DNA of 64,000 nt from Macrostomum lignano. Lineage: Eukaryota. The position numbers and the translations under genes were made by a program. Under the pieces are notes generated by a model. That model ran no database searches. It was not told where the DNA came from and saw nothing but the letters and a program-made list of their open reading frames with translations. The stretch lies in NCBI GenBank assembly GCA_002269645.1, contig NIVC01002524.1, positions 62,001 to 126,000 of the forward strand, read 5' to 3'. Numbering within the stretch: position 1 is the first letter of the stretch; the number at the start of each line of letters is the position of its first letter. Positions 11,987-62,980 of this stretch are shown piece after piece.

Positions 11987-12314
11987 GTGGGGGACTGGCC
12001 TGATCTGGCTTTGGGGGACTGGCCTGATCTGACAGGGTGGGACTGGCCTGATCTGACAGTGGGGGACTGGCCTGATCTGACAGTCGCGGACTGGCCTGAT
12101 CTGACAGTGGCGGACTGGCCTGATCTGACAGTGGCGGACTGGCTTGATCTGACAGTGGCGGACTGGCCTGATCTGACAGTGGCGGACTGGCCTGATCTGA
12201 CAGTGGGGGACTGGCCTGATCTGACAGAGGGGGACTGGCCTGATCTGACAGTGGGGGACTGGCCTGATCTGGCAGGGTGGGACTGGCCTGACCTGACAGG
12301 GTGGGACTGGCCTA
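11980..12314. repeat. 24-bp minisatellite (CTGACAGTGGCGGACTGGCCTGAT)
   Basis: About 14 units, in frame with the preceding exon (LTVADWPD). Confidence 0.95.
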
Positions 12315-13080: not shown

Positions 13081-16000
13081 TCATGGGCCCTGCCGCAAAT
13101 CAAAGCAACAGTCGATCCGGGGGCAGCTAGGGGGAGCCAACCAGTCAAGCATTCCACTGAAGCTCGAAACTTCACAGATTCGAAACTTCACAGATTCGAA
13201 ACTTCACAGATTTGAAACTTCACAGAATCGAACCTACACAGAATCGAAAATTCACAGAATCGAAACTTCACAGAATCAAATCTTCACAGAATCGAATCTT
13301 CACAGAATCGAAACTTCACAGAATCGAAACTTCACAGAATCGAATCTTTACAGAATCGAATCTTTACAAAATCGAACCTTCACAGAATCGAACTTTCACA
13401 GAATCGAACCTTCATAGAATCGAACCTTTAATGAATCGAATCTTCACAGATTCGAAACTTTACAAGCTCGAAAATTCACAAAATCGAAACTTCACAGAAT
13501 CGAAACTTCACAGAATCGAAAATTCACAGAACCGAAACTTCACAGAATCGAACCTTCACAGAATCGAACCTTCACAGAATCGAAAATTCACAGAACCGAA
13601 ACTTCACAGAATCGAACCTTCACAGAATCGAACCTTCACAGAATCGAAAATTCACAGAATCGAAACTTCACAGAATCGAACCTTCACAGAATCGAAACTT
13701 CACAGATTCGAAACTTCACAGAATCGAAACTTCACAGAATCGAACCTTCACAGAATCGAAACTTCACAGATTCGAAACTTCACAGAATCGAAACTTCACA
13801 GAATCGAAACTTCACAGAATCGAAAATTCACAGAATCGAACCTTCACAGAATCGAAAATTCACAGAATCGAAACTTCACAGAATCGAACCTTCACAGAAT
13901 CGAAAATTCACAGAATCGAAACTTCACAGAATCGAAACTTCACAGAATCGAAACTTCACAGAATCGAACCTTCACAGAATCGAAACTTCACAGATTCGAA
14001 ACTTCACAGAATCGAAACTTCACAGAATCGAACCTTCACAGAATCAAATCTTTACAGAATCGAAACTTCACAGAATCGAAACTTCACAGAATCGAATCTT
14101 CACAGAATCGAAACTTCACAGAATCGAAACTTCACAGAATCGAAACTTCACAGAATCGAAACTTCACAGAGTTAAAACTTCACCAGCTCGAACCTTGACG
14201 TCCCCAATTGGTGACTCTATTTCCTAGCAGTAATTTCCCAACATTCACAATTGATCGGGTCCGCTGAATACTGAATTAGACTAGCCATCTATTCGGTTCT
14301 AAACTGGCTACTTATAAGTAGTCATAAGCGGAATGCATGCACATATTCGGCACAAAGCAACGGTTTTCACGGCCGATGCATGCAGTAAGCGGGGCCACGC
14401 CCCCTGCGCAGCTCAGGCTGGCTAGATCTGGGGGGACACGCCCAGTCTCACAATGATTGAATTCCGCTTTTGACACAGGGAGGGGGACGCCTGCACTATA
14501 GCCCCATACCCCCATACAATAAAAATCGCGGGGCGGCTCAAGCCATTGGAAACCTTTCATGTTCATTTGTCCGACATTTTGTGTTCTTTTTTGCTTGAAT
14601 GCTTGCGTTTATTGGGCACCCAACCCACCATGCGATTTCAATTTGAAAATTGGCATTCATCTTAGCTCTCTGTCGGGCTTGTAAATGGATGCGATTTTCT
14701 CTGTCTCACCAGTCGCCGTCAGCGGCCAGGCTTTTGCTTGAGGAGCTCCGCCGTCGTCTTCGATGATGCTCAGCATGGCAACCGGAGCCGTGACGGCAGC
14801 AGCAGCAGCAGTGGGCGCTGCCGTCACCGATTGTGGCCACTTCCTGCAGCTTGCTGGCTGCCAGTCTAAGGCTGGCGTCCACGTCTGAAGTGCTGCCACT
14901 GCCGCGTCCGCCTCTGTTGGTTGAGGGTTGGTGCTAGGGTTATGGCTAGGGCTATGGCTAGGGCTATGGCTAGGGCTATGGCTAGGGTTATGGCTAGGGT
15001 TATGGTTAGGGTCATGGCTAGGGCTATGGCTAGGGCTATGGCTAGGGCTAATGCTATGGTTATGGCTAGGGTTATGCCTAGGGTTATGGCTAGGGTTATG
15101 CCTAGGGTTATGCCTAGGGTTATGCCTAGGGTTATGGCTATGGTTATGGCTAGGGTTATGGTTAGGGTCATGGCTAAGGCTCTGGCTAGGTTAGGATTAG
15201 GGTTTAAGGGTTCTGATTTACTTATCTTGGTTGAGAAGGAGCTTTCTACACAGATGCAACCTAAAGATTGCATGAATTTGTTTTGTTACCTGGTAAACAA
15301 AAGAGGTAAACAAAGCAGGTATTAGTTAATTAGTAAATTCGTTAACTATTTAGTTATTACTTTAATCTAATTAATTTCGTTAATTAATTAAGTAAGTTAA
15401 TTAATTAGTTAATTCGTTAAGTAACAATAGAGAATGCTAAACCATGCCTGTAGGCCTTCCTCTTATTTTTCGCATTCGTGAAGTCCCTCCCTAGCAGTTG
15501 ATTGATTAAATTTTAAAGCAATTGCTTCTGAGCGATTTATGATAAAAATAGAACTCGCAGACGCTGAGAAATGGCAGCAGAGTTTGTGCAGAATGCAATG
15601 CTCTATTATTTTCATTTTCAGCAGTTCACCAGCAACCCTAGCGGTCCGTCCCCATTGTCAAGGAAAAACTAGCAAAAAGCTAAAAACAAACAATTAGAAA
15701 ATCAGACGTTAGCGAAGGACCCCAGCTACAATATTCTTTGTCATACTTTTCGAACAATTTTTTGTTGGCTTTGAATCAGATTTTTAAACATTTTTTTTCA
15801 TATGATGAACTGCCGGAGCTTCATCTATCATTGGCTATGACCAATAAATTATGACATCAATTTTGATTATGACCAATTATGACAGATCAATTTTGACTAT
15901 GACCAATTATGACAGATCAATTTTGACTATGACCAATTATGACAGATCAATTTTGACTATGACCAATTATGACAGATCAATTTTGACTATGACCAATTAT

Positions 16001-38560: not shown

Positions 38561-40076
38561 GATTTTAGAACGGGAGTTTCTGGACGGAAAGGTTTTACAG
38601 AATGGGCAAATCCTTATTCAGGATCTTTAGTCAATTGGATAATTTAAATTATAATCTTATGGCAGACAATAAAAAGGAAATAATGTATTCAGAAGCCTCT
38701 TAATGAAGTTAAGAGTCTTGAGTAATTGTTTCACATATCAATTTGAATTGGTCAGCAAATTGACAGCTGCTAAGCGAATGAACCTGAACAAACAAATTCT
38801 ATATGCTTATGTTAAGAGCGTAAAAGTGTGGACTCCTTAAATATAATCTATAACAGTCTCGATAAACAATGGATATAGCAGGATAAACGTGTCAGATTAA
38901 AAAAAAACAAAAAATGTGAACAACAGAAAACTACAACAATGACAAAGAAAAATTGTGAGAAGCAGGTGGTTAAACAGCGTAATAGGATTAATGGAAATAG
39001 CTTAAGTTATCAAATATTCGATAAGCTGTGTTGGATCAATTTTGTAGCAAGATCGAGGCCTTGCAACGTGCCAGGTCAGAATGAGACTGCCCCTGGATAC
39101 AGACAGACAAAATTACTATAATATGCAGCATTTATTACTGTAATTAATATTATGCATCAGTGGAGGCGGTTGAGAATGAAACATTCAAGAGATTTTCACT
39201 TCTATCATGGCAAAATAGTCTAATCAAAACACATTAAGTTACTTTGTGCGAATGAACTTGCTACTCACACTAGCTACGCTTAAGTAGTATTGATAGCGTA
39301 TTCTTCTTAAAATCTACACAAAAAATTAAAAACGAAAAAGAGTAACAACAATCATTAGAAAACGAATGGATTAACAAACAGGACAACAATGCTTGCAATT
39401 TGCAACATTACTTTATAGCAGAGACTATCTGGCATAACTAATAAAACGCCTCACTACTTAATATATAGGTAACATTGATGGGCAACGCCAGTCAGTCAGT
39501 AGACACTAGCAGTTATTTTTGTATAAAATCGGCCTTCAAAACTCATTTTAATGAATATTTTTTTCCTAAAACGAACACCTACCCCCAGTCACAGATACTA
39601 AAATAACTAGATAGGCCACTCAGCTTTCTACTTTCAGTTCAGTAGCAAAGAAGAATACATAAGCTATTTTATAAAAATAAAGGCAGCTGAAATGACTTTG
39701 ATAAGTTTAGAAGCCCAAGCTTGCAGGCAGGGGCAGGGGTGTGGAAGGCGCGATTGGAGGGTTTAAGCTGGGGGGGGGGGTAAGAGACAATAAAAGAGCT
39801 TTGGCTTTGAAAATACATTAAAATGCTTCGGTTTAACTTGCTACTGAACTGAAAGTAGATTAAACGCAAATTGGCAAGGGGCCCATCTAGTTATTTTAGT
39901 ATCTGTGCCCCCAGCCAATGAAATTTTGAAGGCCGATTTCAACTAATGTTTGCAATCTTCTGGATAGACTAATCACGAGATTTTACGCTTGTCAGATTCC
40001 CGACAAAAGCTACGAGGAACATTATTTGAATGAGGTCAGTAAATAGTCATCTAGACACACATTAATATTAGCCTTC

Positions 40077-49084: not shown

Positions 49085-50521
49085 CTAGAGCTCGGACTTA
49101 ACGCCCTCAAACTTGTTGGGCCGTTTCTCGGCGTGGAATTTCTCAGCTGCGCGAACAAACGCGCGCACCTCCGAGTTCATTAAGTCGGGCAGTTCGAAAG
49201 CGGCAAAGTGACCGCCGTGGTCGAAATCAGCGTAGTGCAACAAGTTCGGATTGGTGACCCGGACGAAGCGCTCAGGAACACGGGAGAGCTCGTGGGCCAG
49301 GCAAGTCACTCCATACGGCACATCGGATGGCATTGATTGATAAGCTGAGGTAGCTTCCATGTCGCTGCCGAACGACTCCTTGTAAAGCCGCATGGACGAA
49401 GTGATGCTGCCAGTTGTCCAATAGATCATTACATTAGTCAGAAGCTCGTCCAGGCTGAATGTCGCCTTCAAGCCGACTAGGTTGCCATTTTCGGCAAAAA
49501 GATTCCCTGGCAAAGTCCACACGCTGAACTTTTCAATGATGTAGGCAGCCAGGCCCACTGGTGAGTCTGACAGGGCGTGGCCCACTGAGTCCGGCCGAGT
49601 CGAGTGTAGATGCATGTGCCCCGACTCTCGAATCGTGTTGCCGAACTTCTCCAGGTAGGGGAAGAGCTTGCCACAGTCCAGCCTGTTGAACAGGACACCT
49701 TCTGGCAGGAATGATCCCAGAATCGTCTGGATCATTATCGACGGCTGACGAACTGGCTGAGCAGGCATATTTGTATGAAAGCCGAGCACTCGCTCCGGAA
49801 ACAATCGAGGCATCACGTGACCGATGACGCTGCCGAAATCACCGGCTTGGATGTAATACTGGCGATACCCGAGCCTGACCATCAGCTTGTCGAACACTCG
49901 AGCACAGGCAGCGGCACTGAAGCCTCGCTTCTTCGCCGCTTCGGACCACCCGTATCCCGGAATCGAGGGAGCTACAACTTCGAACGCCAACCCGTCCGTA
50001 TCTGGAGTCGTCAGCAGTGGAATCAGCTTGTAAAACTCGAACACTGACCCGGGCCAACCGTGCAAAATCAACAGAGGCACTCGCTTCTTCACCCCCTTCT
50101 TCGACGGTTTCAGGTGCATAAAGTGCACTTTTAGTCCTTCGATCCGAGTGAAATAGTTCGGAAAACTGTTCAGGCGATCCTCCCAGACTCGCCAGTTGTA
50201 TTTGTTGAGCCAGTGAGACACCAGCTGCTTCATGAAGGCGCCGTTGAAGCCGTACTCGAAGCCGGAGTTCTCGACCGGCTCCACAAACTTGAACGCTTTC
50301 AAGCGCGACCTCAAATCGTCGAGTGTTGCATTGCTGACAGACAGTCTTGTGGCTTCCACCGCTTCGCCGTCGCTGCTTGAGTCGCTCGAGGCACCCCAGT
50401 TGAGCGTGGCTGGCAGGGCCGGCTTATCCGGAGCTGCGAGATTGTCCAGGCAGCCGAGGCCCGCAAGAAGCACGAATGCCAGACAGGCAGTGCAGGCCAG
50501 TGGGAGCAGAGTGTTGCACAT
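49085..50521 (-). CDS. EPHX1: Microsomal epoxide hydrolase (EPHX1/JHEH family), copy A, 478 aa, intronless
   Basis: N-terminal signal-anchor; HGWPGSVFEF oxyanion motif; nucleophile GDFG; DSPVGLAAYIIEKF; acid HEL; GGHFAAFE catalytic His. Confidence 0.95.
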   Translation of the reverse strand: MCNTLLPLACTACLAFVLLAGLGCLDNLAAPDKPALPATLNWGASSDSSSDGEAVEATRLSVSNATLDDLRSRLKAFKFVEPVENSGFEYGFNGAFMKQLVSHWLNKYNWRVWEDRLNSFPNYFTRIEGLKVHFMHLKPSKKGVKKRVPLLILHGWPGSVFEFYKLIPLLTTPDTDGLAFEVVAPSIPGYGWSEAAKKRGFSAAACARVFDKLMVRLGYRQYYIQAGDFGSVIGHVMPRLFPERVLGFHTNMPAQPVRQPSIMIQTILGSFLPEGVLFNRLDCGKLFPYLEKFGNTIRESGHMHLHSTRPDSVGHALSDSPVGLAAYIIEKFSVWTLPGNLFAENGNLVGLKATFSLDELLTNVMIYWTTGSITSSMRLYKESFGSDMEATSAYQSMPSDVPYGVTCLAHELSRVPERFVRVTNPNLLHYADFDHGGHFAAFELPDLMNSEVRAFVRAAEKFHAEKRPNKFEGVKSEL

Positions 50522-52006
50522 TTTTACTCCAATGTCTCCAAAAGCGTTTCTCTGACTGAGGTTTTAAATGTAAGATTTTCGTATACAGCCTTCGTTCGTG
50601 CATTTGCAACAAACCCCCTCAACACAATTACGAGTACGAGGGTGCAGGCATGAAATTGGGGTGGGCAGATTGCCTTAGTCTGGATAGTACTGTACTTTGC
50701 TCTAGTTGTCGGCTTGTGCAGTCTAGCCTTCTATCCTTTCCTGTTCCTATTTTACAGGGGTTTTGGGAACGTGCGAGTACTGTTTAAACTCATGCTTAAA
50801 GCCAACTATCTGCCTCTTGTACGTGCGACTATCCACTGCCCAAGGCCCATGCCCAAGTTACTGTGTGCCAATAGTAGTGCTTTCGTTCAATCGAGTAAAA
50901 CATCAGGATGCACTTAGCAATTGCGCAAAACTTCATTGCATTTAGAGTCGCGGCGCATTGAGTTTTTGTGTCGTTTTTTCGTGTACTTTCTGAAACACAC
51001 ACATCACAATACGTCGTATATTATTGTGCAGTGAAGTAACACCGGTGCTATTTTACAAGTATACGTAAATAAAGGAGTAAGAAGAAATTGCAGGGTGAGT
51101 ACACTTCTAGCGCACACAATAACTGTAAGATAGTACAGTGAGATAGCCAACCAAAAAGTAAAGCTCGGGCCAAGTTGAGCTGTTATCTATCACTAAACAG
51201 AAAACTCTACTCACAAAAAGCAACACGCCCTATTTTAATCAGCCAAAACAGCGATTGAAGAAAGAGTTAAACAGAAAATCTTCCATCAAAAACCTCAGTC
51301 AGAGAAACGCTTTTGGAGACATTGGAGTAAAAATGTGCAACACTCTGCTCCCACTGGCCTGCACTGCCTGTCTGGCATTCGTGCTTCTTGCGGGCCTCGG
51401 CTGCCTGGACAATCTCGCAGCTCCGGATAAGCCGGCCCTGCCAGCCACGCTCAACTGGGGTGCCTCGAGCGACTCAAGCAGCGACGGCGAAGCGGTGGAA
51501 GCCACAAGACTGTCTGTCAGCAATGCAACACTCGACGATTTGAGGTCGCGCTTGAAAGCGTTCAAGTTTGTGGAGCCGGTCGAGAACTCCGGCTTCGAGT
51601 ACGGCTTCAACGGCGCCTTCATGAAGCAGCTGGTGTCTCACTGGCTCAACAAATACAACTGGCGAGTCTGGGAGGATCGCCTGAACAGTTTTCCGAACTA
51701 TTTCACTCGGATCGAAGGACTAAAAGTGCACTTTATGCACCTGAAACCGTCGAAGAAGGGGGTGAAGAAGCGAGTGCCTCTGTTGATTTTGCACGGTTGG
51801 CCCGGGTCAGTGTTCGAGTTTTACAAGCTGATTCCACTGCTGACGACTCCAGATACGGACGGGTTGGCGTTCGAAGTTGTAGCTCCCTCGATTCCGGGAT
51901 ACGGGTGGTCCGAAGCGGCGAAGAAGCGAGGCTTCAGTGCCGCTGCCTGTGCTCGAGTGTTCGACAAGCTGATGGTCAGGCTCGGGTATCGCCAGTATTA
52001 CATCCA
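49848..52006. repeat. 718-bp inverted repeat arms (49848-50565 and 51289-52006) around a 723-bp spacer
   Basis: Arms compared by eye appear identical; they cover 44 nt upstream of the ATG plus codons 1-225 of both EPHX copies. Confidence 0.9.
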
Positions 52007-52763
52007 GGGTGGCGACTGGGGAGCCGGCATTGGTCACATAATAACAAGAGAGTTTCCGGAGCGAGTGCTCGGCTTCCATACCAATATGCCGATGCAGCCA
52101 TTCCGACAGCCATCAGTGATCGTACAGATGATCGCCGGATCGTTCATACCTGACGGTATCCTGTTTAGCAAGAAGGACGGACAAAAAATATTTCCCTACT
52201 TTGAAAAGCTGAGCGACATCATCCGTGAGAGCGGGTACATGCACATTCAAGCCACTCGGCCGGACACCATCGGGCACGCCTTGTCGGACTCGCCAGTGGG
52301 TTTGGCTGCCTACATTCTTGAGAAGTTTAGCGTTTGGACAGATCCGCAAAATAGGCTTTCCCAGACTGGCAACCTTATCGGCCCGAAGGCGGCCTTCAGC
52401 CTGGACGAGCTGCTGACCAATGTAATGATCTACTGGACCACTGGCAGCATCACTTCGTCCGTGCGGCTGTACAAGGAAGTTTTTAGTGAGAATAGGGAAA
52501 CTACGATGGCCTACTTCTCCATCCCGTCAGATGTTCCGCACGGAGTCGCAAGCTTCTCTAACGAGCTTTCTCGGGTGCCCGAACGCATCGTACGAGTTAC
52601 CCATCCCAACCTGCTACACTACGCTGACTTCGATCACGGCGGTCACTTTGCCGCTTTTGAACTGCCCGACTTGATGAACTCAGAGGTGCGCGCGTTCGTT
52701 CGCGCAGCTGAGGACTTCCACGCCAAGAAACGGTCGCCACTGGGTGAAGGCAAAGAGCTTTGA
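51333..52763 (+). CDS. EPHX1: Microsomal epoxide hydrolase (EPHX1/JHEH family), copy B, 476 aa, intronless
   Basis: Same motifs as copy A, with canonical GGDWG and ESGYMHIQ. Start placed at ATG 51333 by symmetry with copy A, not at the TTG at 51255. Confidence 0.95.
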   Translation: MCNTLLPLACTACLAFVLLAGLGCLDNLAAPDKPALPATLNWGASSDSSSDGEAVEATRLSVSNATLDDLRSRLKAFKFVEPVENSGFEYGFNGAFMKQLVSHWLNKYNWRVWEDRLNSFPNYFTRIEGLKVHFMHLKPSKKGVKKRVPLLILHGWPGSVFEFYKLIPLLTTPDTDGLAFEVVAPSIPGYGWSEAAKKRGFSAAACARVFDKLMVRLGYRQYYIQGGDWGAGIGHIITREFPERVLGFHTNMPMQPFRQPSVIVQMIAGSFIPDGILFSKKDGQKIFPYFEKLSDIIRESGYMHIQATRPDTIGHALSDSPVGLAAYILEKFSVWTDPQNRLSQTGNLIGPKAAFSLDELLTNVMIYWTTGSITSSVRLYKEVFSENRETTMAYFSIPSDVPHGVASFSNELSRVPERIVRVTHPNLLHYADFDHGGHFAAFELPDLMNSEVRAFVRAAEDFHAKKRSPLGEGKEL

Positions 52764-53741: not shown

Positions 53742-56700
53742 TCAGCCGGTTCGCAGAGGAGCTGGATGTCCTAGTGCGCTAGCCTCGTGACCAACATCCT
53801 CGCCCACCATTAGGCCTAAGCGGGTCCTGTCGTTGCGCAATCCGATAGCCTGGTTGATTAGGTAGTGCACCAACACATCCGGATCGAACAGGTCCATCTT
53901 GACCCGCACCGGGCTGCTCGGTGCCCAACGGCCGAGGCCGGTGACGAGAAGTTCGCGCAATACGTCCAAAATGTTGAGCGGTGGTGATAGGGCTGAGTAG
54001 TTCTCGTACTCGTTGACGAAGGCGAACCTCTCGAACTGCCACAGAGCTCGACTGTTACTATCGATCTCGTCAATTGTCTTGGAAAAGAGCGCAACAATGA
54101 GGCTTAAAAGCAAAATGGTGGTGATGATTATGTAAATCGGTAGCAGGATGTAGGGCACGACGAATACAGCATCCGGGTGCGGACAGTTGAGGCTTGTGTT
54201 TTGGCGAGCTTCAAACACCTGGGCGCATTCGCTTCCAGTCATCTGGTCTAGGTGGTACTCGCCAAACATACTGTAGAAGCAAATATGCAGCACATGCCTG
54301 ATGACTTCAGACATGCTGAGTTGGTTTGGGTTGTAGGCAAAGAAACCGTTCGGATGCATTAAAGACGTCATGAAGATGCCAAATCCAAACAGATAGATGA
54401 ATAGGATGTATAGAAATGGCAGCAGGTCTTTGATGATCATAGTAGACATCATGGTGAGCTTCGGGCCAAAGTAGGCATTCACGCGTGCAATGTTGAGCAG
54501 CTTCACCCACATGAGAAGACAGGCCAGCCCGTAAAAGAAACGGGCACAGAACCATACATGATTCTCAAATAGTTCGGTAAACGTCTCCGGGGTCTCCTCC
54601 CGCAAGGCCATTGTAAGACGAAGGATGAAGGCGGTAATCATGAAGAGGCATGCAAAGCCGTCAACTATGTTCCATTTGTTTGAACCATACTCGTGGAAGC
54701 TGTCGTGCCAAAGCGACAGACCGAGCTCTCGCAGCTCCTCGATGATGAAGCCTAACGCGATTATGTAAGCACAAACCTCCAGTGGTGAAATTGTCCAGTT
54801 GAAGTCAATCAACACAGTGTAGGACATAATTAGAATCAGCGTCACGTGACTCATTGTAAAGTAGCGAAACTTAACACTCGGGATGTGGTAGAAGCAGTAC
54901 AGCAGGCCGATGAATATTTGTAGCTTCGCTTTCACAGACTTCCTCGAGCCAAATATTCGCTCTCCGCTAAAGTCGTTGTCAAACATGGTCGTCGCCGGTC
55001 CCGTATCTTCATGCAAGGCGAAGCTCTCGTTGCTTCCCATGCTGCCCTGAATGGTTGCATCATTCTGCTTCTGCTTCTGTTTCAGCTGCGGCTGCTGTTG
55101 TTCAACCCGTGAAGAAGCGCGGCCACCGTCATAAGCGTACAAGAGAATCGCCAAGAGAGGATTCATTGGGATGATGCCCATGATGACTGCGAATTCCCGC
55201 AGCCAAGGGTTCATATTGCAAAGAAAGCGCTGCCAGGTGATGTCCATGGCCTTCTGACAGACGTCCAAACGAAGAAAGGAGTCGCACTGACAGTTAGCCG
55301 CTAGATGAATGCAGCTCAAATTTCCGAATTCCGGCATGCTCTGCAATAGGTATTGGTAGGTCACCCACTTGTCCTCACTCATATCAACTTGAACTGCCTT
55401 GGTGAGTGCATCACAGGCAACGCGTTCACACTGGTCGGCAAGGTCAGTAACGGCAGGCAGCTGCAAGGCATCAATTTCCAAGACAGTGTTGAGCTTCCTA
55501 AGAATTCCGGCGGACAAAACGCAAAGAGGAACGATTTCGAACTGCGTCTTTCGCAGGAAAGCAAGGGTCAGATTGAACCTGCCAGTAAGAATGCTCCAAA
55601 CAGCTAGCGTCTCGACTGGATTGTTTATTTGCAGCGTATCTTTTCCAGACTCTCGAACGTCATCACCGGCTGATGGGGGGCTCATGCCAATGCATATGGC
55701 CACCCGCTGGTTGAGCTTGCGAAGATTAAATGCCTGCCGCTTTCCTCCTATCGTACCTGTGCCCGAATCCATAAAACAGGTGTAAAACTGCTTGCTTATA
55801 ATGCTGGCATCCCTGTTGGTGTTGTTATAAAGAGTAGAAATGTGGTCTTCAAGAAACCCGCTCACTCTGTCCCAGAGAACGCCACATTTCATTACATCAT
55901 TAAGTGCAGAAATATCCTCACGAAACAGGATGTACTTGGTTGTGAAGATTGCAATTGTGTCGATGATCTCACGATTTTCCGAGTATCTGTGAATCGCGTT
56001 GGTCTTCAGGGCAGCCATCAGAATAGTTTGGAACTCGATCACATCCTGTAGGTTCTCCTCATCAAGATCCAGCAACTCGTCGACTAGCTTCATCTCTTCA
56101 GCTGGGTCTCCGACTGTGTTGTAGTAGCAACGACGGCTCTCCGAGTCGATGAGCTGCAGCAAGCACAGGAATTCCTGAAAGCCGCGGCTCCTGTAGAGAT
56201 CCTGCGGCTTGGTCACCTTAGTGTCAGAAGACACGCGATCGGTAAAATGGCGAATCAGCTCGCGCAGCGTGCCGCGATTCTTGTTGCTCATCATGACGTC
56301 GATTGCGGTACGGCCGTCCGTAGTTTCCCGATCGACTGTAGCACCATGGTCTAGCAGCAGCTTCATTAGCGTAATGTTCTGATTGGCAACTGCAATGTGC
56401 AATGGCGTCTTGCCGTCAGCATCCTGAGCATTTATGAGTTCTGGCGCTGCTCCCAGCACGAGACCTGCGTGTTCTTGTAGGTCGTTTATGCAGGCTCGGT
56501 GCAGTGGTGTCAGCTGGGCCTGATCAACCAGGCTGGCATCGGCGCCGTGGCTTAATAGTAGCTCAAGGAGCACAGTGGAGCTGTCAGAGCACGCTTTGTG
56601 CAGCAAATAGTCCCCGGTGGGTAGTGCAACGTTTGGATTGGCGCCCTGCTCGAGTAGGAAGGCCACTGTTCCGGCCACATCGGGTCCTGATAGCGCATAG

Positions 56701-57146
56701 TGTATCGGTATGAAGCCGGCCGTGTTGGGTCGATTAATCTCAGCCCCTTGATCTAGGGCAATCTCTAGCAGTTTGATCTTGCTTAGAGCAGCTGCAACGT
56801 CGCTTAGACGCATGGCTTCATGCAGTTCCAAGTCGATTACCTTGGGATTGGCAAAACGTTTCAATGCCTCGATGTCATCGTCCATGATAGCTTGATACAG
56901 CAGTTCGGCTATGTTAGGTTGGGTCTCTACAGGTTGGATCACGGCATCGGAGTCCGCCCTCTCAGTTTCTGGCTCCCTGTCGTCTGCTTCTGGCCTGTCT
57001 TCCGTCACCTGGGGCGCGGTGGAATCGCGACGCTTTGTGGTTAGTCGGGTGCCGAACAATCGCAGGTTGCCGAAGCCCAACTTTTTATTCGTCTTCTTTT
57101 TCGAGCCGAAGAAGCCCTTGTCCTGAGACTCCGGTGGCGACGACAT
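53742..57146 (-). CDS. TRPM-like cation channel with N-terminal ankyrin repeats, 1134 aa, intronless
   Basis: Ankyrin repeats (TPLHRAC, GKTPLHIAV...LLLDHGA); MHR4-like LAVWSIL...FGNLSCIHLA...CQKAMDITW; pre-S1 FYHIPSVKF; six TM segments; pore FYSMFGEY; TRP box LWQFERF...EY...LSPPLN. Confidence 0.9.
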   Translation of the reverse strand: MSSPPESQDKGFFGSKKKTNKKLGFGNLRLFGTRLTTKRRDSTAPQVTEDRPEADDREPETERADSDAVIQPVETQPNIAELLYQAIMDDDIEALKRFANPKVIDLELHEAMRLSDVAAALSKIKLLEIALDQGAEINRPNTAGFIPIHYALSGPDVAGTVAFLLEQGANPNVALPTGDYLLHKACSDSSTVLLELLLSHGADASLVDQAQLTPLHRACINDLQEHAGLVLGAAPELINAQDADGKTPLHIAVANQNITLMKLLLDHGATVDRETTDGRTAIDVMMSNKNRGTLRELIRHFTDRVSSDTKVTKPQDLYRSRGFQEFLCLLQLIDSESRRCYYNTVGDPAEEMKLVDELLDLDEENLQDVIEFQTILMAALKTNAIHRYSENREIIDTIAIFTTKYILFREDISALNDVMKCGVLWDRVSGFLEDHISTLYNNTNRDASIISKQFYTCFMDSGTGTIGGKRQAFNLRKLNQRVAICIGMSPPSAGDDVRESGKDTLQINNPVETLAVWSILTGRFNLTLAFLRKTQFEIVPLCVLSAGILRKLNTVLEIDALQLPAVTDLADQCERVACDALTKAVQVDMSEDKWVTYQYLLQSMPEFGNLSCIHLAANCQCDSFLRLDVCQKAMDITWQRFLCNMNPWLREFAVIMGIIPMNPLLAILLYAYDGGRASSRVEQQQPQLKQKQKQNDATIQGSMGSNESFALHEDTGPATTMFDNDFSGERIFGSRKSVKAKLQIFIGLLYCFYHIPSVKFRYFTMSHVTLILIMSYTVLIDFNWTISPLEVCAYIIALGFIIEELRELGLSLWHDSFHEYGSNKWNIVDGFACLFMITAFILRLTMALREETPETFTELFENHVWFCARFFYGLACLLMWVKLLNIARVNAYFGPKLTMMSTMIIKDLLPFLYILFIYLFGFGIFMTSLMHPNGFFAYNPNQLSMSEVIRHVLHICFYSMFGEYHLDQMTGSECAQVFEARQNTSLNCPHPDAVFVVPYILLPIYIIITTILLLSLIVALFSKTIDEIDSNSRALWQFERFAFVNEYENYSALSPPLNILDVLRELLVTGLGRWAPSSPVRVKMDLFDPDVLVHYLINQAIGLRNDRTRLGLMVGEDVGHEASALGHPAPLRTG

Positions 57147-60100
57147 CTTGCGGTGGACGAACTGGTGTTTCAGGTCCGTCTTTCTTGGTCACTAGATGGT
57201 CAAAGAAATAGATTTTTCTGTTTAAGGAACACGAGTCACAGAGCTAGCTATTTAAAGCAATGTTAATCACTTTATAAAAAAAGTCGAAAACTCACACAGC
57301 CAAGCGAACATGTGAGACCGCCTTATCGATGGTTTATGCAAGGGCTGTTCTACTCGCTCGCGTTTCCCACTATTCTGAACCAGTCACTTGCCTTTCTTAC
57401 TAATTTGGCTAGATAAACTTTGCATGTCTAATTGGCACCCTCTACTGCTCAAGTGGAGCAGTTTCTACCTGTGTTTGCACTTCTTTTCTATTGAAACATT
57501 CGAGCCAAACTCCAATCTTTTTTCTGTTGGACAATTTTTATCTAATCAACAGACCAGACGGCTCCAATCATCTAATTGTGTGCTCACAAATTTGACAGCG
57601 ATTAAAAATTTAACTAAGAAAATTTGAGCAAAGGTAAATTAAAGATTAACCGCAATTTAACTGGAGCATACCTGGCGGCTGATTCTCTCGCGAATTCGTG
57701 CGTAAAAATTCTTTAATGAGCTCACCGGTGCAATGCGCAAACAATTTTGGAATGCTAAACAATCTGTTTTTTATCTCAAAGCCCAATTTGCATTTCATGC
57801 ACCACCAATCTCACTAATTGGCCGTGACCGTATTGGACATCGTTATGTACATGTCAGCGTAATGTACGCGTTTTTTCTATCTTTCTGGGGCCTGCTAGTG
57901 CTGGCGCAACCTCTGCGTCTGTCGATCACAGCTCTCACACACAAGTGATTAAATGCACCAGAGGGGATTACAACTGGTAGACTATGGGATTGTACATTAA
58001 TGCCATAGTCAGGTAATGTACATTAATTGGTGCCTTGGGGGTTGGCCCTCTATAGCGCACTGCATGCACAACCCCCAGGGAAATCCAATTAAGAAGTAGT
58101 TCAATGTTTAAGAAACTGATCCCCTGACCATAGCTGAGAGCTCATAAAGTTAAAATGACGCTAGTCTAAGTTGGAGTCTAATCTAGCGAAGAGAAGCTAC
58201 GATAATTGTGTCGGTTTATCCACTGATTATTATAAGCATGGTGTACAGTAGCATTAAAATTGCCACCCTAGACCCGAGCAAGCGGTGACAAACCATTCAT
58301 TTTTACAGTGGTGCTCAACCGTTCCCTAACCTCTAGGGCAGCACTTTTTATGATACTGATTTTAAAACCATTTCATGCAAAGGTTGTGGTGGGTCCGTCT
58401 ACCATAAATCATTGTGAAATTTTGAATGGCAAAAACGGATCAAAGTGTTTGAATCAAAAACTCGATGCAATGACGAAGACAAAATAGATGCATACTACTT
58501 TCAGTAACTCCGTCAACAAATACCCGATGCGCGCAGACAGCAGCTGTAAAACTTCCTTGACAGGGATGAAGAAAGTCTTACTGAGTCTTACGGCTTTACT
58601 GCTTTACTGAATCCTTTACTGATACGGGCAAAACGTACTCAGCGAGGGAACTCACGAGAGGCTACAGCTTTTATTAGCAACTCATCCAGCCTGTAATACA
58701 ATATCTTTCTAGCCAGCCTAAAAATATTAATCAAGAAGCTCCACTGCGCCGGGCCCTCGATAAAAGTCTGTCTGTTGCTAACAATTATGCAGCCGTAATA
58801 ACTGCAGCCATCGCATCCCTGACCCCCCCCCCTGTCTCTTCGATTGCCGCCAGAATTGAATTCGCTCTCAAATCTCCTCAGAGGAGAGGAGGGGGCGAGC
58901 AGACTGCGCTCAGAAGTAGAGAAAAAGCCGAATCTATCCAAAGGCCAACCTCGCCCTCGTTTTCTCTACACTTTCCGTTCGACGAAGAAGCTGAAAGAAG
59001 AAGATTGGGGCAGCCAGAGTTTTCTATTCTTAGCCTTTAGCCCGTGGCCTCGAAAATGGCAGCCGGTTTCAAGGAGGAGGGCGATGGGGATTAAGAATGG
59101 GAGCTGGGAGAAGAGGAGAGGCGGCAAGAGAGACTGGAGAGGGGCACGGCACTGCAGTCGCAGTTGTTAGAAACGCAGGCCGCCCGTGTTCAATAGATAG
59201 ATAAAGATTGCCTGCCTGCTGGCTACAGGGTCTGGGGGCCGAATTGTCCTTTCCTTTTCCTGTTCCCTAATCCCCAACTTGCCGCCCCACCCCAGCTGTC
59301 CCGCCTGTCACTGACGCAGGTGATAGGATGCGCCGGGATTATTGGGGGCGGCACCTCATGAATCTGGGTCGGATAGCAGAGTGCACGGATAACTAAGTTG
59401 CCATTCGGATTCGCTGTAAACACACTGAACACGCCAGAGATTTCTCTAACTATGCTTTTTAATATTTTTTACCACTTTGACCATTTTGAGTTTTGCGGCT
59501 TTCGGTTGCAGCCGCACGGATTAGTTAAAAGCTTCGCTAGAAACGTGGAACAGCTGACCACCACTCTACTGAAAGTTGAACCCGCCGCCGCTCTAAACTT
59601 AGCGGAAGCAAGAAATTGATTGGCGCGAATAAAATGACCAGCGCGCGCAACAATATCGCCGACAAACCTTGAATAGGAGCATCGGGTGTAGGCGGCACCG
59701 GAGTAATCAGCATTGGCATTTCACCCTGTTCGTGTCTCGAACCCCCTTCTATCCGACCCTTCAGCCCACTGCCTGCACCCCAGCCGCTTTCTGCCCGCTT
59801 TTAGAGGAAAGTGTAAGATTGGGAAATGTTTGCGGGGTGTCTTGTCGGTTTGGACTTTGGAAGGCTGGTTGGGGGGGGGGGCAGTGCGTAATGGGAATCG
59901 CGGAAACTTGCCGGAGCTTTGGGCGATCCCAACTCGACCGATTTCAGTCTGGCTTTGGTTCTATCAGTGCATTTCTCTGGCCTCCTCTCCATCCTTTTGC
60001 TTTGCTTCTTTTCCCTGTAATTTGATCCTAGTAACCGATTCTGACGGTAAGAAAAAGGGCTTAGGGATAAAGCGGCAGATGGGCTGCGAGGATGCCGATC

Positions 60101-60362
60101 CCCTTCTCTTCATCCCAGAGCCGTCCCGGCTCTAAAGCCAGCCAGTTCTGATGTCCGCGAGATTTTCCTCGCTATCGCATAATGCTGGCTGATGCTTCCT
60201 AGTTTGATGAGGGATGAGAGGCAGCTGGGAAATGAGCTCGGCGAGAGGGGTTTTTGCCTCGTCGATGTCTACCAGAGATGCCAGTGTGTTGAAGCTCTTC
60301 AGACCGGGAGTCTCGTAGTAACACTTCTCTTCTCAATATTTTCGCGAAAGTAATTTTCCTCG

Positions 60363-62980
60363 CTAGGGCTCGGTCTCGCTCAGATCAGCAGCATGGCGCC
60401 ACCAAACTGTGTTGACAAACTGTGTTCGATCTGCAGTGGAAGATTGATAGCAGCACGCACTCCTATTCTAATCTTATACTGTATCGCACTGACTTCCACT
60501 CGCTCTCTTGGCAATTAGGTAACTTTCGGCACCTTTCGGTTTTGGCTTTCGGGAGCGCTAATCTAATTTCCGAACAAGGAACACTAGTAGAGCATGTTTC
60601 TGCTTGCCGAATTGTTCGGGTAAAGGCACGAGAGATTTTGTATTTCTGCTTTGCCGTTAGTTTTTAGCAAACATAATCCAGAAATAAGAGCTATCTATTG
60701 ATAAAGTTACCTTTGCATTTGCTTGCAAATATTTCTTGCTTATTTTTTCGGTAACACAAATAAAGGGTACACACATGTAGAGCAGTGCAAGGGTAACTAG
60801 ATGTGTTCAAGGGTGTCTAGATGACTGCAATGGTGTCTAAATGAGTGCAAGAGTATCAGATGAGTGCGAGGGCATCTAGATGAGTGCAAGGGTATCTAGG
60901 TGAGTGCGAGGGTATCTAGATGAGTGCAAGGGTATCTAGGTGAGTGCGAGGGCATCTAGATGAGTGAAAGACTATCTGTAGATGAGTGAAAGAGTATCTA
61001 GATGAGTGAAAGAATATCTAGATAAGTGCAAGGGGATCTAGGTGAGTGCGAGGGTATCTAGATAAGTGCAAGGGGATCTAGGTGAGTGCGAGGGTATCTA
61101 GATGAGTGCAAGGGTATCTAGATGAGTGCAAGGGTGTCTAGATGAGTGCAAGGGTATCTAGATGAGTGAAAGAGTATCTAGATGAGTGAAAGAGTATCTA
61201 GATGAGTGAAAGAGTATCTAGATGAGTGAAAGAGTATCTAGATGAGTGCAAGGGTATCTAGATGAGTGAAAGAGTGTCTAGATGAGTGCAAGGGAATCTA
61301 GGTGAGTGCGAGGGTATCTAGATGAGTGCGAGGGTATCTAGATGAGTGCGAGGGTATCTAGATGACTGCAATGGTGTCTAAATGAGTGCAAGAGTATCAG
61401 ATGAGTGCGAGGGCATCTAGATGAGTGCAAGGGGATCTAGATGAGTGCAAGGGGATCTAGATGAGTGAAAGAGTATCTAGATGAGTGAAAGAATATCTAG
61501 ATAAGTGTAAGGGGATCTAGGTGAGTGCGAGGGTATCTAGATGAGTGCAAGGGTATCTAGATGAGTGCAAGGGTATCTAGGTGAGTGCGAGGGCATCTAG
61601 ATGAGTGAAAGACTATCTGTAGATGAGTGAGAGTATCTAGATGAGTGCGAGGGTATCTAGATGAGTGCGAGGGTATCTAGATGAGTGCGAGGGGATCTAG
61701 ATGAGTGAAAGAGTATCTAGATGAGTGAAAGAATATCTAGATAAGTGCAAGGGGATCTAGGTGAGTGCGAGGGTATCTAGATGAGTGCAAGGGTATCTAG
61801 ATGAGTGCAAGGGTATCTAGGTGAGTGCGAGGGCATCTAGATGAGTGAAAGACTATCTGTAGATGAGTGAGAGTATCTAGATGAGTGCGAGGGTATCTAG
61901 ATGAGTGCAAGGGGATCTAGATGAGTGAAAGAGTATCTAGATGGGTGAAAGAATATCTAGATAAGTGCAAGGGGATCTAGGTGAGTGCGAGGGTATCTAG
62001 ATGAGTGCAAGGGTATCTAGATGAGTGCAAGGGTATCTAGGTGAGTGCGAGGGCATCTAGATGAGTGAAAGACTATCTGTAGATGAGTGAGAGTATCTAG
62101 ATGAGTGCGAGGGTATCTAGATGAGTGCAAGGGGATCTAGATGAGTGAAAGAGTATCTAGATGAGTGAAAGAATATCTAGATAAGTGCAAGGGGATCTAG
62201 GTGAGTGCGAGGGTATCTAGATGAGTGCAAGGGTATCTAGATGAGTGCAAGGGTATCTAGATGAGTGCAAGGGTATCTAGATGAGTGCAAGGGTATCTAG
62301 ATGAGTGCAAGGGGATCTAGATGAGTGCAAGGGTATCTAGATGAATGCAAGGGTGTCTAGATGAGTTCAAGGGTGTCTAGATGAATGCAAGGGTGTCTAG
62401 ATGAGTGCAAGGGTATCTAGATGAGTGCAAGGGTATCTAGATGAGTGCAAGCAAGGGTATTATTAGTCGAGGCTTCTTTACCTTGAAACTTTGCGCCCTT
62501 CAGGGTAAACGCAATGCTGGAGTCCGTCCCACTTGGTTGAAGATGGCAAGCAAGATCCCATTTTGGAGTGACGTATGCTTAGGTTAGATCGATGGTTAGA
62601 ATGTCACAGTTGCTCAACTCGCCTATGAAGCCAATTCAGACAATTCAATTGATTAGCGGTCACTGGGATTGCAGATAAGCGGCATTGGATTTTCTGCTGT
62701 CACAAAAATATCAATCAGTCTCCACTGGAGATGAGGAAATATGGAAATTTTTAGTCAGGGTCACAAAATTTGCCTAGAAATTCATTAACGAAATTGATTT
62801 TTTTTCAACTTTATTTTATAGTTGGCATAAATTACAGTGGGTGAAGTTTTACCCGAAACAACCTCCGCGTGGCAATTAGCCAATTTGACTTAATCCAGTT
62901 AGAAATTTACGCTGAATGGATAGAGAGAGCTGCAGCTCTGCTAGAATCAGAGGCAGGGCGAAGCCGCAACCCCAGATCGG
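60363..62980 (-). CDS. 3' exons of an unidentified gene entering from beyond the window; complement(join(60363..60430,62482..62577,62911..62980))
   Basis: Three exons with GT-AG borders and matching phases (0/1, 1/1, 1/stop) give PIWGCGFALPLILAELQLSLSIQPYVTPKWDLACHLQPSGTDSSIAFTLKGAKFQDRTQFVNTVWWRHAADLSETEP*. No family recognised. Confidence 0.5.
60780..62460. repeat. 20-bp minisatellite (GATGAGTGCAAGGGTATCTA) with block duplications of 220-240 bp
   Basis: About 80 units; the marker variant GACTATCTGTA recurs periodically. Confidence 0.95.

What the first reader, a model, noticed from the sequence alone, without database searches (positions are those of the whole stretch)
53742..57146. TRPM-type channel with ankyrin repeats in place of MHR1/2 (SLOG)
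Seen: about 5-7 ankyrin repeats at aa ~80-300, then segments resembling TRPM MHR3/4 (VMKCGVLW..FLEDHISTLYN; NPVETLAVWSIL; FGNLSCIHLA...CQKAMDITW), then a TRPM-style pre-S1 (FYHIPSVKF), pore (FYSMFGEY) and TRP box (WQFERF..EY...PPL). Known: canonical TRPM channels have MHR1-4 and no ankyrin repeats, which characterise TRPA/C/V/N. Inference: domain swapping produced a chimeric channel with a new cytosolic sensor. The 3.4-kb CDS has no introns, whereas most other genes here are spliced, which suggests retroposition or a lineage-specific expansion.
Basis: partly seen in the sequence, partly recalled or inferred. Interest (0 to 1): 0.8.

Follow-up and report, generated by a model that had tools for sequence, protein, structure and literature searches.

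The report
Flatworm ankyrin-bearing TRPM-like channel (TRPM_MCLZ family)
This intact, intronless gene encodes a TRPM-type ion channel with ankyrin repeats where the usual SLOG/MHR1-2 domain would be; the design is real but already known from parasitic flatworms as TRPM_MCLZ, the target of the drug meclonazepam, and this gene is a free-living (macrostomid) flatworm relative of it.

Summary
Window 53742-57146 (-) is one uninterrupted 1134-aa ORF. It has a disordered N-terminus, six regular ankyrin repeats plus a cap (aa 79-306), a helical MHR3-like region, MHR4, a TRPM-type S1-S6 channel (FGEY filter, pore-loop cysteines) and a TRP box. Neither the protein nor the window contains any SLOG.

The novelty claim does not hold. 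The channel domain falls in a 96%-bootstrap clade with bona fide TRPM_MCLZ proteins. One of these, S. guineensis P0216, carries all eight published Sm.TRPM_MCLZ residues at their exact numbers. The literature (2023-2026) already describes TRPM_MCLZ as a TRPM-like channel that lacks MHR1/2-SLOG and carries N-terminal ankyrin repeats.

The window gene belongs to a 100%-supported macrostomid subclade, which has at least 11 paralogue clusters in Macrostomum lignano and is sister to the parasite orthologues. Its closest relative (52% identity, collinear) is also intronless. So are both neighbouring genes, so the lack of introns is not a local anomaly.

Compared with parasite TRPM_MCLZ, the window protein differs at 4 of the 6 drug-contacting residues and keeps a canonical TRPM pore filter.

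Verdict: new member of a known kind, of modest interest. The macrostomid expansion itself was not described in any paper I found.

The parts
53742..57146 (-). Complete single-exon CDS (1134 aa plus stop) of an ankyrin-bearing TRPM-like channel, in the macrostomid subfamily of the TRPM_MCLZ clade
56913..57146 (-). aa 1-78: N-terminal tail, predicted disordered and not conserved with the M. lignano orthologue
   Evidence: pLDDT about 30; the BLASTP alignment starts at aa 80
56229..56912 (-). aa 79-306: ankyrin repeat domain, an N-terminal cap helix pair plus six regular 33-34-residue repeats (first helices at 114, 147, 181, 214, 248, 281); it occupies the position of MHR1/2-SLOG
   Evidence: Pfam Ank_2/3/4/5, E 1e-19 to 4e-12; PDB ankyrin/DARPin hits; AF2 pLDDT 81-93
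55647..56228 (-). aa 307-500: all-helical linker. From aa ~397 it is homologous to the second half of TRPM MHR3 (ILFRED...VMKCGVLW...FLEDHISTLYN); aa 307-396 are unassigned
   Evidence: hhalign against canonical TRPMs starts at aa ~397; no beta-strands; no PDB sequence hit on its own; strongly conserved with P0002
55167..55628 (-). aa 507-660: MHR4-like domain (NPVETLAVWSIL, FGNLSCIHLA, CQKAMDITW)
   Evidence: Pfam PF25508 aa 500-625; aligns to TRPM4 558-689 and TRPM8 554-683; hhalign
54939..55097 (-). aa 684-736: Q/K-rich loop between MHR4 and pre-S1, predicted disordered and variable in length across the family
   Evidence: pLDDT below 50; gapped region in alignment A1
54087..54935 (-). aa 738-1020: pre-S1 helix (FYHIPSVKF 752-760), S1-S4 voltage-sensor-like domain, S4-S5 linker, S5, pore helix, S6
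   Evidence: TM-only search: the 60 best PDB hits are all TRPM; AF2 helices 756-781, 788-814, 824-848, 863-889, 908-930, 945-959, 991-1020
54246..54314 (-). aa 945-967: pore helix and selectivity filter F961-G962-E963-Y964; the pore-loop cysteines C974 and C988 follow
   Evidence: site table: canonical TRPMs have F/Y-G-E-L here, while parasite TRPM_MCLZ has F-E-x-S-I; the cysteine pair is conserved in most TRPMs and across the clade
54000..54071 (-). aa 1026-1049: TRP helix with TRP box W1036-Q-F-E-R-F1041 and E1046; the PPL motif follows at 1055-1057
53742..53999 (-). aa 1050-1134 plus stop: short C-terminus with two helices (1058-1072, 1089-1102). It lacks the further C-terminal helix present in other family members
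   Evidence: AF2; alignment A1 columns 1600-1700

Best explanation
The gene encodes a subunit of a tetrameric TRP cation channel of the flatworm 'TRPM-like' family. The founding, functionally characterised member of that family is TRPM_MCLZ (Schistosoma mansoni Smp_333650), the channel activated by the anthelmintic meclonazepam. The window protein belongs to a macrostomid (free-living flatworm) subfamily that is sister to the parasite TRPM_MCLZ orthologues. It is not a 1:1 orthologue of them.

Shown here:
(a) The domain order is ANK(6+cap) - MHR3-like - MHR4 - pre-S1 - S1-S6 - TRP helix, with no SLOG.
(b) This order is conserved collinearly in the M. lignano orthologue and throughout the clade.
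(c) The channel domain is TRPM-type and groups with bona fide TRPM_MCLZ.

Inferred by homology:
- The protein assembles as a tetramer and conducts cations through an F-G-E-Y filter, which is closer to canonical TRPMs than to the divergent parasite filter. The outer pore is probably braced by a C974-C988 disulfide, as in TRPMs.
- Gating is coupled through the TRP helix to the S1-S4 cavity, the same cavity that binds menthol in TRPM8, praziquantel in TRPM_PZQ and meclonazepam in TRPM_MCLZ.
- That cavity retains oxygen ligands at the five positions of the TRPM Ca2+ site (E804, E807, N826, D829, E1046), so Ca2+-dependent gating is plausible.
- Four of the six meclonazepam-contacting residues differ (F763, F800, K882, F1041), as does the S4 determinant (N885). 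The natural or drug ligand is therefore probably different, and I predict no meclonazepam sensitivity.
- The ankyrin domain sits at the periphery of the cytosolic ring, where SLOG sits in TRPMs. It most likely serves as a protein-interaction or inter-subunit scaffold and not as a nucleotide sensor.

History: loss of SLOG with N-terminal ANK predates the split of macrostomids and neodermatans. The macrostomid lineage then expanded the family and holds it as intronless genes.
For: The ORF is intact. Domains. TM-only PDB searches list only TRPM in the top 60. Foldseek top hits are TRPM2/3/4/7/8/5, plus NOMPC. Exhaustive phmmer: the closest relatives, P0004-P0012 and P0017-P0019, all carry ANK plus a channel without SLOG, and all named ones are flatworm proteins. 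P0216 (S. guineensis) has H827, H831, Y864, E868, R943, H946, Y1038 and Y1117 at the exact published positions; S. mekongi has Y944 and E. granulosus has F952 (PMC12861061, PMC10788528). Opisthorchis P0011 holds the published exon 3a/3b channel duplication. NJ tree (455 columns, 161 sequences, 200 bootstraps): window+P0002 100%, macrostomid clade 100%, macrostomid plus TRPM_MCLZ clade 78% (34 taxa) or 96% (36 taxa), with no SLOG-bearing member. Direct BLASTP of window against P0216: aa 434-1067, 25% identity, E 4e-47. The orthologue P0002 is 52% identical and collinear over aa 80-1126, and is also a single ORF. The literature describes TRPM_MCLZ as lacking MHR1/2-SLOG and having N-terminal ankyrin repeats (PMC11731825; PMC12861061 calls the group 'TRPM-like').
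Against: There are no expression or functional data for this gene. The tree is neighbour-joining with a simple distance correction. It has no labelled TRPS, TRPC or TRPN outgroups and is rooted at the midpoint. Support for the node joining macrostomid and parasite groups is 78% without the two basal M. lignano fragments. Only 2 of the 6 residues reported as drug-contacting and well conserved in 63 TRPM_MCLZ orthologues are kept, and the 'completely conserved' R943 is K here. Two of the five putative Ca2+-site residues are not conserved in the nearest orthologue (K816, S1057 in P0002), which weakens the Ca2+-gating inference. The window protein and P0002 lack the C-terminal helix that other members have, so the mode of tetramer assembly is uncertain. 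The source species of the window is not known.
Confidence: 0.82

Rival explanations
1. One reading: a novel chimeric channel created in this lineage by swapping MHR1/2 for ankyrin repeats, and spread or created by retroposition.
For: The architecture is as described. The CDS is intronless, whereas schistosome TRPM_MCLZ has two introns. General TRPM evolution papers state that TRPM/TRPS lack ankyrin repeats.
Against: The same architecture occurs in at least 11 M. lignano paralogue clusters and in trematodes and cestodes, and it has been published as TRPM_MCLZ since 2023. The intronless state is shared with the 52%-identical orthologue, so it is old. There is no poly(A) tract downstream, and the neighbouring genes are intronless too.
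Confidence: 0.04
2. The family descends from TRPS (ced-11-like) or from a separate, deeper TRP lineage and not from TRPM proper; the TRPM resemblance would then reflect the shared TRPM/TRPS ancestor.
For: The clade's position relative to other TRPMs is unresolved in my tree: the next nodes have 16% support or less. Rohr et al. call the group 'TRPM-like' and place it next to, not inside, the other TRPMs. No TRPS structure exists, so the PDB searches cannot tell TRPS from TRPM.
Against: The highest-scoring hits outside the clade are flatworm and cnidarian TRPMs with SLOG. TRPS, like TRPM, is described as SLOG- and Nudix-linked and ankyrin-free, so this reading would not explain the architecture any better.
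Confidence: 0.08
3. It is a member of one of the classical ankyrin-bearing TRP families (TRPN, TRPA, TRPC, TRPV) with a convergently TRPM-like pore.
For: It has N-terminal ankyrin repeats. NOMPC is the second-best Foldseek hit and a strong full-length sequence hit.
Against: With the ankyrin repeats removed, no TRPN/A/C/V chain reaches the top 60 PDB hits, while TRPMs score 97-57 bits. MHR3/MHR4 homology (PF25508; hhalign probability 100%) is specific to TRPM/TRPS. The NOMPC match is explained by its 29 generic ankyrin repeats plus the common TRP fold.
Confidence: 0.02
4. The ORF is a non-functional or unexpressed copy (a dead retrocopy) that merely remains open.
For: It is intronless, there are no expression data, it has a short C-terminus lacking the terminal helix, and several otherwise conserved pocket residues are substituted.
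Against: A 3.4-kb ORF stays open in two species that have diverged to 52% protein identity. Conservation is concentrated in structured regions (ANK helices, MHR3/4, S1-S6, TRP box), while the N-terminal tail and loops have drifted. This is the signature of purifying selection.
Confidence: 0.04

Closest known systems
TRPM_MCLZ (Schistosoma mansoni Smp_333650 and its about 63 orthologues in trematodes, monogeneans and cestodes), the meclonazepam-activated 'TRPM-like' channel
   Same: Same domain order: N-terminal ankyrin repeats, no MHR1/2-SLOG, MHR3/4-like region, TRPM-type S1-S6 and TRP helix. The channel domains form one clade (96%/78% bootstrap). Conserved S1 H (H831 = H767), S2 EE pair, S3 N/D, pore-loop cysteines and TRP-box W.
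   Different: About 25% identity over the MHR/channel part. The window protein lies in a macrostomid-specific sister subclade with many paralogues, against a single gene in parasites. Four of the six drug-contacting residues differ (H827F, Y864F, R943K, Y1117F), and the S4 determinant H946 is N. The filter is FGEY, like canonical TRPM, where parasites have F-E-x-S-I. The gene has one exon where the parasite gene has three. It is about 250 aa shorter, with a short C-terminus.
Canonical TRPM channels (nvTRPM2, TRPM3, TRPM1, TRPM7, TRPM8, TRPM5, TRPM4)
   Same: MHR4 and the second half of MHR3, the pre-S1 motif FYxxPxxKF, the S2 EE / S3 NxxD Ca2+-site positions, the F/Y-G-E filter, the pore-loop cysteine pair, the TRP box W-x-F-x-R and the PPL motif. 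These are the best structural matches.
   Different: No SLOG/MHR1-2, with canonical ankyrin repeats in its place. No Nudix or kinase domain. No long C-terminal coiled coil. TRP box is WQFER where TRPM has WKFQR.
Flatworm ANK+SLOG TRPMs (Clonorchis/Opisthorchis 'TRPM2' P0021; M. lignano Mlig003066 P0022)
   Same: Flatworm TRPMs with Pfam-significant N-terminal ankyrin repeats. Deleting SLOG from this architecture would give the window protein's domain order.
   Different: They retain SLOG and a full-length PF25508 domain. Their channel domains lie in a different, 93%-supported clade, and no supported sister relationship to the TRPM_MCLZ clade was found.
TRPN / NOMPC
   Same: Ankyrin repeats N-terminal to a group-1 TRP channel with a TRP box; a strong Foldseek hit.
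   Different: NOMPC has 29 repeats joined to the channel by a linker domain, with no MHR3/4. Its TM domain scores below every TRPM in the PDB.
TRPS (ced-11-like, 'soromelastatin')
   Same: Sister family of TRPM, sharing MHR-type cytosolic domains and TRP box 1.
   Different: TRPS is described as SLOG- and Nudix-linked with no detectable ankyrin repeats. Its relationship to the window protein was not tested, because no labelled TRPS sequences were available.

Membership tests
TRPM_MCLZ / flatworm 'TRPM-like' clade | N-terminal ankyrin repeats and absence of the MHR1/2-SLOG domain | tested here: met
   Pfam Ank E 1e-19 with no LSDAT hit; AF2 shows seven helix pairs and no alpha/beta SLOG fold; no SLOG-coding DNA in the window
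TRPM_MCLZ / flatworm 'TRPM-like' clade | The channel domain groups with bona fide TRPM_MCLZ, to the exclusion of SLOG-bearing TRPMs | tested here: met
   NJ bootstrap 96% (36 taxa) / 78% (34 taxa). TRPM_MCLZ identity of the reference sequences was verified by eight residue numbers. Caveat: this is a distance tree without labelled outgroups.
TRPM_MCLZ / flatworm 'TRPM-like' clade | 1:1 orthology with Smp_333650: the six ligand-contacting VSLD/TRP residues (H827, H831, Y864, E868, R943, Y1117) are conserved | tested here: not met
   The window has F763, H767, F800, E804, K882, F1041, so 2 of 6 are kept, and it sits in the macrostomid sister subclade. It is therefore filed as a member of the family, not as a TRPM_MCLZ orthologue.
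TRPM_MCLZ / flatworm 'TRPM-like' clade | Three-exon gene, with exon 3 encoding the whole channel domain | tested here: not met
   Single exon here and in M. lignano; three exons confirmed in S. guineensis. This is a feature of the parasite genes and does not define the protein family.
TRPM_MCLZ / flatworm 'TRPM-like' clade | Forms a cation channel activated by (S)-meclonazepam | not testable with these tools
   Needs heterologous expression. From the pocket substitutions I predict insensitivity (inference).
Canonical TRPM | MHR1/2 (SLOG) N-terminal domain | tested here: not met
Canonical TRPM | MHR3 and MHR4 cytosolic domains | tested here: met
   PF25508 above its cut-off; hhalign probability 100% from aa ~397. 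The first ~90 residues of the linker (aa 307-396) are unassigned.
Canonical TRPM | TRPM-type S1-S6, pore filter, pore-loop cysteines and TRP box | tested here: met
Canonical TRPM | C-terminal rib and pole helices (coiled coil) | tested here: inconclusive
   A conserved helix at 1089-1102 aligns with the family's 'QAFxLRN' helix. The further C-terminal helix seen in paralogues is absent in the window protein and P0002.
TRPN/TRPA/TRPC/TRPV | TM domain most similar to that family; ankyrin repeats joined to the channel without MHR3/4 | tested here: not met
   No non-TRPM chain among the 60 best TM-only PDB hits; MHR3/4 are present
TRPS (ced-11-like) | Groups with ced-11-like sequences; TRPS-type TRP box 2; SLOG and Nudix domains | not tested
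   No labelled TRPS sequences were obtainable. SLOG and Nudix are absent, but that does not settle descent.

The most novel reading that the evidence does not exclude
The SLOG-less, ankyrin-bearing 'TRPM_MCLZ' design predates parasitism. It was present in the common ancestor of macrostomids and neodermatans. In free-living macrostomids it radiated into a large, intronless gene family (at least 11 clusters at 50% identity in M. lignano) that keeps an ancestral TRPM-type FGE pore and Ca2+-site residues, whereas parasites keep one copy with a remodelled pore. If so, the transgenic model Macrostomum offers a tractable system for working out the unknown physiological role and natural ligands of an anthelmintic target family. 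The flatworm ANK+SLOG TRPMs may also record the route by which the architecture arose (ankyrin gain first, SLOG loss second).
Probability: 0.5. Interest if true: 0.45.

Novelty: new member of a known kind. Interest (0 to 1): 0.3.

Why it matters
TRPM_MCLZ is one of only two validated TRP drug targets in schistosomes, and neither its physiological activator nor the role of its ankyrin domain is known. Three things follow from showing that free-living macrostomid flatworms carry an expanded sister subfamily with a more canonical TRPM pore. First, it dates the architecture to before the origin of parasitic flatworms. Second, it corrects the general statement in TRPM evolution papers, which did not sample Platyhelminthes, that TRPM-type channels lack ankyrin repeats. 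Third, it points to an experimentally tractable organism for functional work. As a discovery about channel architecture it is not new.

Tried and rejected
1. The word-indexed homologue searches, with the channel part alone and with a six-sequence family profile, found only the M. lignano orthologue and three canonical TRPMs. They were too insensitive. The exhaustive phmmer and a search seeded with P0017 were what worked.

2. I tried to show a single origin of the ankyrin module by sequence. Against a macrostomid-only ANK profile, generic ankyrins score higher (median 106 bits) than true TRPM_MCLZ ankyrin domains (median 40 bits) or ANK+SLOG TRPMs (50 bits). This is uninformative, so a single acquisition rests only on parsimony.

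3. I tested whether the ANK+SLOG TRPMs are the sister group, and so a possible intermediate. They fall in a different clade, and the deep nodes are unsupported.

4. I looked for synteny with the M. lignano locus and found none beyond the gene itself and a shared MITE-like element.

5. I looked for retroposition hallmarks downstream of the stop codon and found none.

6. The supplement of Rohr et al. 2026, which I wanted for matching locus tags, is not held. I used residue numbering instead.

7. An Rfam scan of the window found nothing.

8. Discrimination between TRPS and TRPM was not possible, because no labelled TRPS sequences were available.

9. A repeat TM-only PDB search added nothing beyond.


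Full report
OBSERVATION. Window 53742..57146 (minus strand) is a single uninterrupted ORF of 1134 codons. It has its own ATG and stop codons upstream. Pfam detects ankyrin repeats (aa ~149-283, E 1e-19) and the TRPM2-like MHR domain PF25508 (aa 500-625, 30.5 bits against a cut-off of 27). It detects no SLOG/LSDAT domain even at E<=1. Against the PDB, aa 503-1067 align in one stretch to nvTRPM2, TRPM3, TRPM7, TRPM1 and TRPM8.

An AlphaFold2 model built on a 12-sequence family alignment (mean pLDDT 72.7, pTM 0.66) shows seven helix pairs between aa 79 and 306. Six of them are spaced 33-34 residues apart. Residues 307-500 form a purely helical region, followed by MHR4, a disordered Q/K-rich loop (684-736) and a standard six-helix TRP channel with pore helix and TRP helix. 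No alpha/beta fold that could be a degenerate SLOG is present. tblastn with the SLOG regions of 13 TRPMs finds nothing in the whole 64-kb window.

IS IT TRPM-TYPE? With the ankyrin part removed, the 60 best PDB matches of the transmembrane region are all TRPM channels, from 97 bits (nvTRPM2) to 57 bits (TRPM4). No TRPN, TRPC, TRPA or TRPV chain reaches that list. A profile of the family without its ankyrin part aligns to a profile of 14 canonical SLOG-bearing TRPMs with probability 100% and E 1.4e-71 over 626 columns. The alignment begins at window aa ~397, where 'ILFRED..L..VMKCGVLW...FLEDHISTLYN' pairs with the MHR3 signature 'AL..NRV.FV.LFL.NG...FLT..RL..LYN'. It continues through MHR4, the pre-S1 motif, S1-S6 and the TRP domain. 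Foldseek's best matches are TRPM2, TRPM3, TRPM4, TRPM7, TRPM8 and TRPM5 structures. NOMPC ranks second only because of its ankyrin repeats plus the shared TRP fold. Residues 307-396 could not be assigned.

RELATIVES. An exhaustive phmmer search of 1.84 billion representatives with aa 302-1134 gave 1190 hits. The closest (28-39% identity) all combine N-terminal ankyrin repeats, mostly PF25508, and an ion-transport domain, without SLOG. All named members are flatworm proteins. At least eleven 50%-identity clusters come from Macrostomum lignano: Mlig021145, 030565, 020550, 019746 and relatives, 012389, 022043/007691, 033956/026745, 004154, 008432/029514, 000356 and 011337. Single genes come from trematodes (Opisthorchis, Dicrocoelium, Fasciolopsis, Echinostoma) and cestodes (Schistocephalus). 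The best match, M. lignano BOX15_Mlig021145g1 (P0002), is 52% identical and collinear from aa 80 to 1126. It is also encoded by one uninterrupted 3444-nt ORF, present on two contigs. The architecture is thus conserved, and it is not an assembly or gene-model artefact.

ALREADY DESCRIBED. General TRPM evolution papers state that ankyrin repeats are undetectable in TRPM and TRPS and infer an 'ankyrin-free' ancestor (PMC7306681). Neither that paper nor the 2026 MBE study (PMC13143021) mentions Platyhelminthes or flatworm genera in its main text. The parasitology literature, however, describes exactly this design. Park et al. [quoted passage not shown] Sprague et al. (PMC11731825) state that it 'lacks the NH2-terminal MHR1/2 or SLOG domain. 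[quoted passage not shown] Rohr et al. (PMC12861061) catalogue 63 orthologues, call the group 'TRPM-like', and report a three-exon gene whose exon 3 (the whole channel domain) is duplicated in Clonorchis, Opisthorchis and Paragonimus.

LINKING THE WINDOW PROTEIN TO TRPM_MCLZ. A search seeded with an unnamed clade member (P0017) returned named schistosome, Fasciola, Echinococcus, Taenia and other orthologues. S. guineensis P0216 has H827, H831, Y864, E868, R943, H946, Y1038 and Y1117, which are all eight published Sm.TRPM_MCLZ residues at their exact numbers. S. mekongi has Y944 and E. granulosus has F952, as published. Opisthorchis P0011 contains two tandem copies of the MHR4-plus-channel module, which is the published 3a/3b duplication.

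In a neighbour-joining tree of the MHR4-to-TRP region (455 columns, 161 sequences, 200 bootstraps):
- the window protein pairs with P0002 (100%);
- the pair lies in a macrostomid clade of 12 (100%);
- that clade is sister to the neodermatan TRPM_MCLZ group plus a few unnamed sequences (78%, or 96% when two basal M. lignano fragments are included).

No member carries SLOG, and the internal branching of the parasite group mirrors flatworm systematics. Direct BLASTP of the window protein against P0216 gives 25% identity over aa 434-1067, E 4e-47.

HOW THIS MEMBER DIFFERS. At the positions of the six meclonazepam-contacting residues the window protein has F763, H767, F800, E804, K882 and F1041, so two of six are kept. 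The S4 sensitivity determinant H946 is N885. I therefore file it as a member of the family, in a macrostomid sister subfamily, and not as a TRPM_MCLZ orthologue, and I predict no meclonazepam sensitivity (inference).

The selectivity filter is F-G-E-Y. That is the canonical TRPM pattern (F/Y-G-E-L), whereas parasite TRPM_MCLZ has F-E-x-S-I. The pore-loop cysteine pair (C974, C988) is conserved. The five positions of the TRPM Ca2+ site carry E804, E807, N826, D829 and E1046, but two of them are K and S in the M. lignano orthologue, so Ca2+ gating is only a tentative inference. The window protein and P0002 end soon after a conserved helix (1089-1102) and lack the further C-terminal helix of other members.

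INTRONS AND ORIGIN. S. guineensis TRPM_MCLZ has three exons over 38 kb. Its junctions map to window aa ~195 (inside the ankyrin domain) and ~562 (inside MHR4). The macrostomid genes lack both introns. The introns do not coincide with the ANK/MHR boundary, so they say nothing for exon shuffling. The intronless state is shared by two proteins that are only 52% identical. There is no poly(A) remnant. Both neighbouring genes, a head-to-head pair of epoxide hydrolases, are single ORFs too. Ancient retroposition or stepwise intron loss both remain possible, and neither is a feature of this locus alone.

A second ankyrin-bearing flatworm TRPM lineage exists, with ANK-SLOG-MHR3/4-channel: P0021 in Clonorchis/Opisthorchis and P0022 in M. 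lignano, confirmed by Pfam. It would be a natural intermediate, but it falls in a different, 93%-supported clade, and the deep nodes are unresolved. Ankyrin sequence similarity is too generic to test a common origin.

MECHANISM (shown and inferred). Shown: the domain anatomy, its conservation, and family membership. Inferred from homology with TRPM structures and from the published function of Sm.TRPM_MCLZ as a ligand-activated cation channel: a tetrameric cation channel gated through the S1-S4 cavity and TRP helix, with the ankyrin domain replacing SLOG at the periphery of the cytosolic ring as a scaffold or interaction module and not as a nucleotide sensor. The ligand is unknown.

SOURCE ORGANISM. 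The source is not given. All close relatives are flatworm proteins and the nearest is from M. lignano. A ~370-bp MITE-like element at ~39590-39920 is about 90% identical to one in M. lignano. The window therefore most likely comes from a Macrostomum relative other than the sequenced M. lignano.

VERDICT. What appears to be undescribed in the papers I could search is the large, intronless macrostomid expansion of this family and its retention of a canonical TRPM pore. Rating: new member of a known kind, interest 0.3.

Noticed in passing
window 49085-50521 (-) and 51255-52763 (+): A head-to-head pair of microsomal-type epoxide hydrolase genes (Pfam EHN plus alpha/beta hydrolase), each a single ORF. 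They are 85% identical overall, but the first ~225 residues are 100% identical, which suggests an inverted duplication homogenised by recent gene conversion.
   Followed up: partly
window ~39590-39920; L001 ~6830-7290: A ~370-bp element with terminal inverted repeats, about 90% identical (apart from internal indels) to a copy next to the M. lignano orthologue. It looks like a MITE-type transposon family shared by the two genomes, which hints that the window comes from a Macrostomum relative.
   Followed up: partly
P0021 (Clonorchis sinensis / Opisthorchis viverrini 'TRPM2', 1708 aa); P0022 (M. lignano Mlig003066, three copies, 1781 aa): A second kind of ankyrin-bearing flatworm TRPM, with Ank_2 (aa ~63-219), then SLOG (LSDAT_euk), a full PF25508 domain and the channel. 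It falls in a separate, 93%-supported clade with S. japonicum 'TRPM2'. I did not find it described in the papers I read. It could be an intermediate on the way to the SLOG-less design, but no supported sister relationship was found.
   Followed up: partly
L001 4257-23444 (-) around the gene at 10001-13444 (+); protein P0003: In M. lignano the orthologue lies inside the span of a 3230-aa gene model on the opposite strand, so it is either nested in an intron or the model is an annotation artefact. UniRef entry P0003 is a fused model: fatty-acid hydroxylase (PF04116) plus a truncated copy of this channel.
   Followed up: no
P0011 (Opisthorchis viverrini T265_12782) aa 415-997 and 1125-1682: The deposited gene model concatenates both alternative copies of the channel-encoding exon (3a and 3b), giving a protein with two tandem MHR4-plus-channel modules. 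The second copy carries the schistosome-like S4 histidine (RTLH) and the first carries RTLN.
   Followed up: partly
window protein aa 804, 807, 826, 829, 1046, compared with P0002 aa 813, 816, 835, 838, 1057: The five positions of the TRPM Ca2+ site are E, E, N, D, E in the window protein but E, K, N, D, S in its closest orthologue, so Ca2+ dependence may differ even between these two.
   Followed up: no
L003 (Logan DRR639838 contig, 6849 nt), gene at 1298-4516: P0017 is a full-length ANK-plus-channel family member from an unidentified organism. It branches between the macrostomid and neodermatan groups and is encoded by an uninterrupted ORF, though the contig may be a transcript. Identifying the sample would show which other flatworm order carries the family.
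   Followed up: partly
window 13212-14198 (+): A 328-aa ORF with weak Pfam matches to the bacterial-type HTH_31 and DACNV domains, but no individual stretch passes, and NCBIfam gives nothing meaningful. Probably chance.
   Followed up: partly
window 1-2000, 8001-10000, 10277-11096, 60001-62000: Stretches with strong GC skew (-0.45, +0.37, +0.36), and a region where long ORFs overlap in three frames on one strand. tblastx matches low-complexity sequence in M. lignano. These are probably simple or low-complexity repeats.
   Followed up: no
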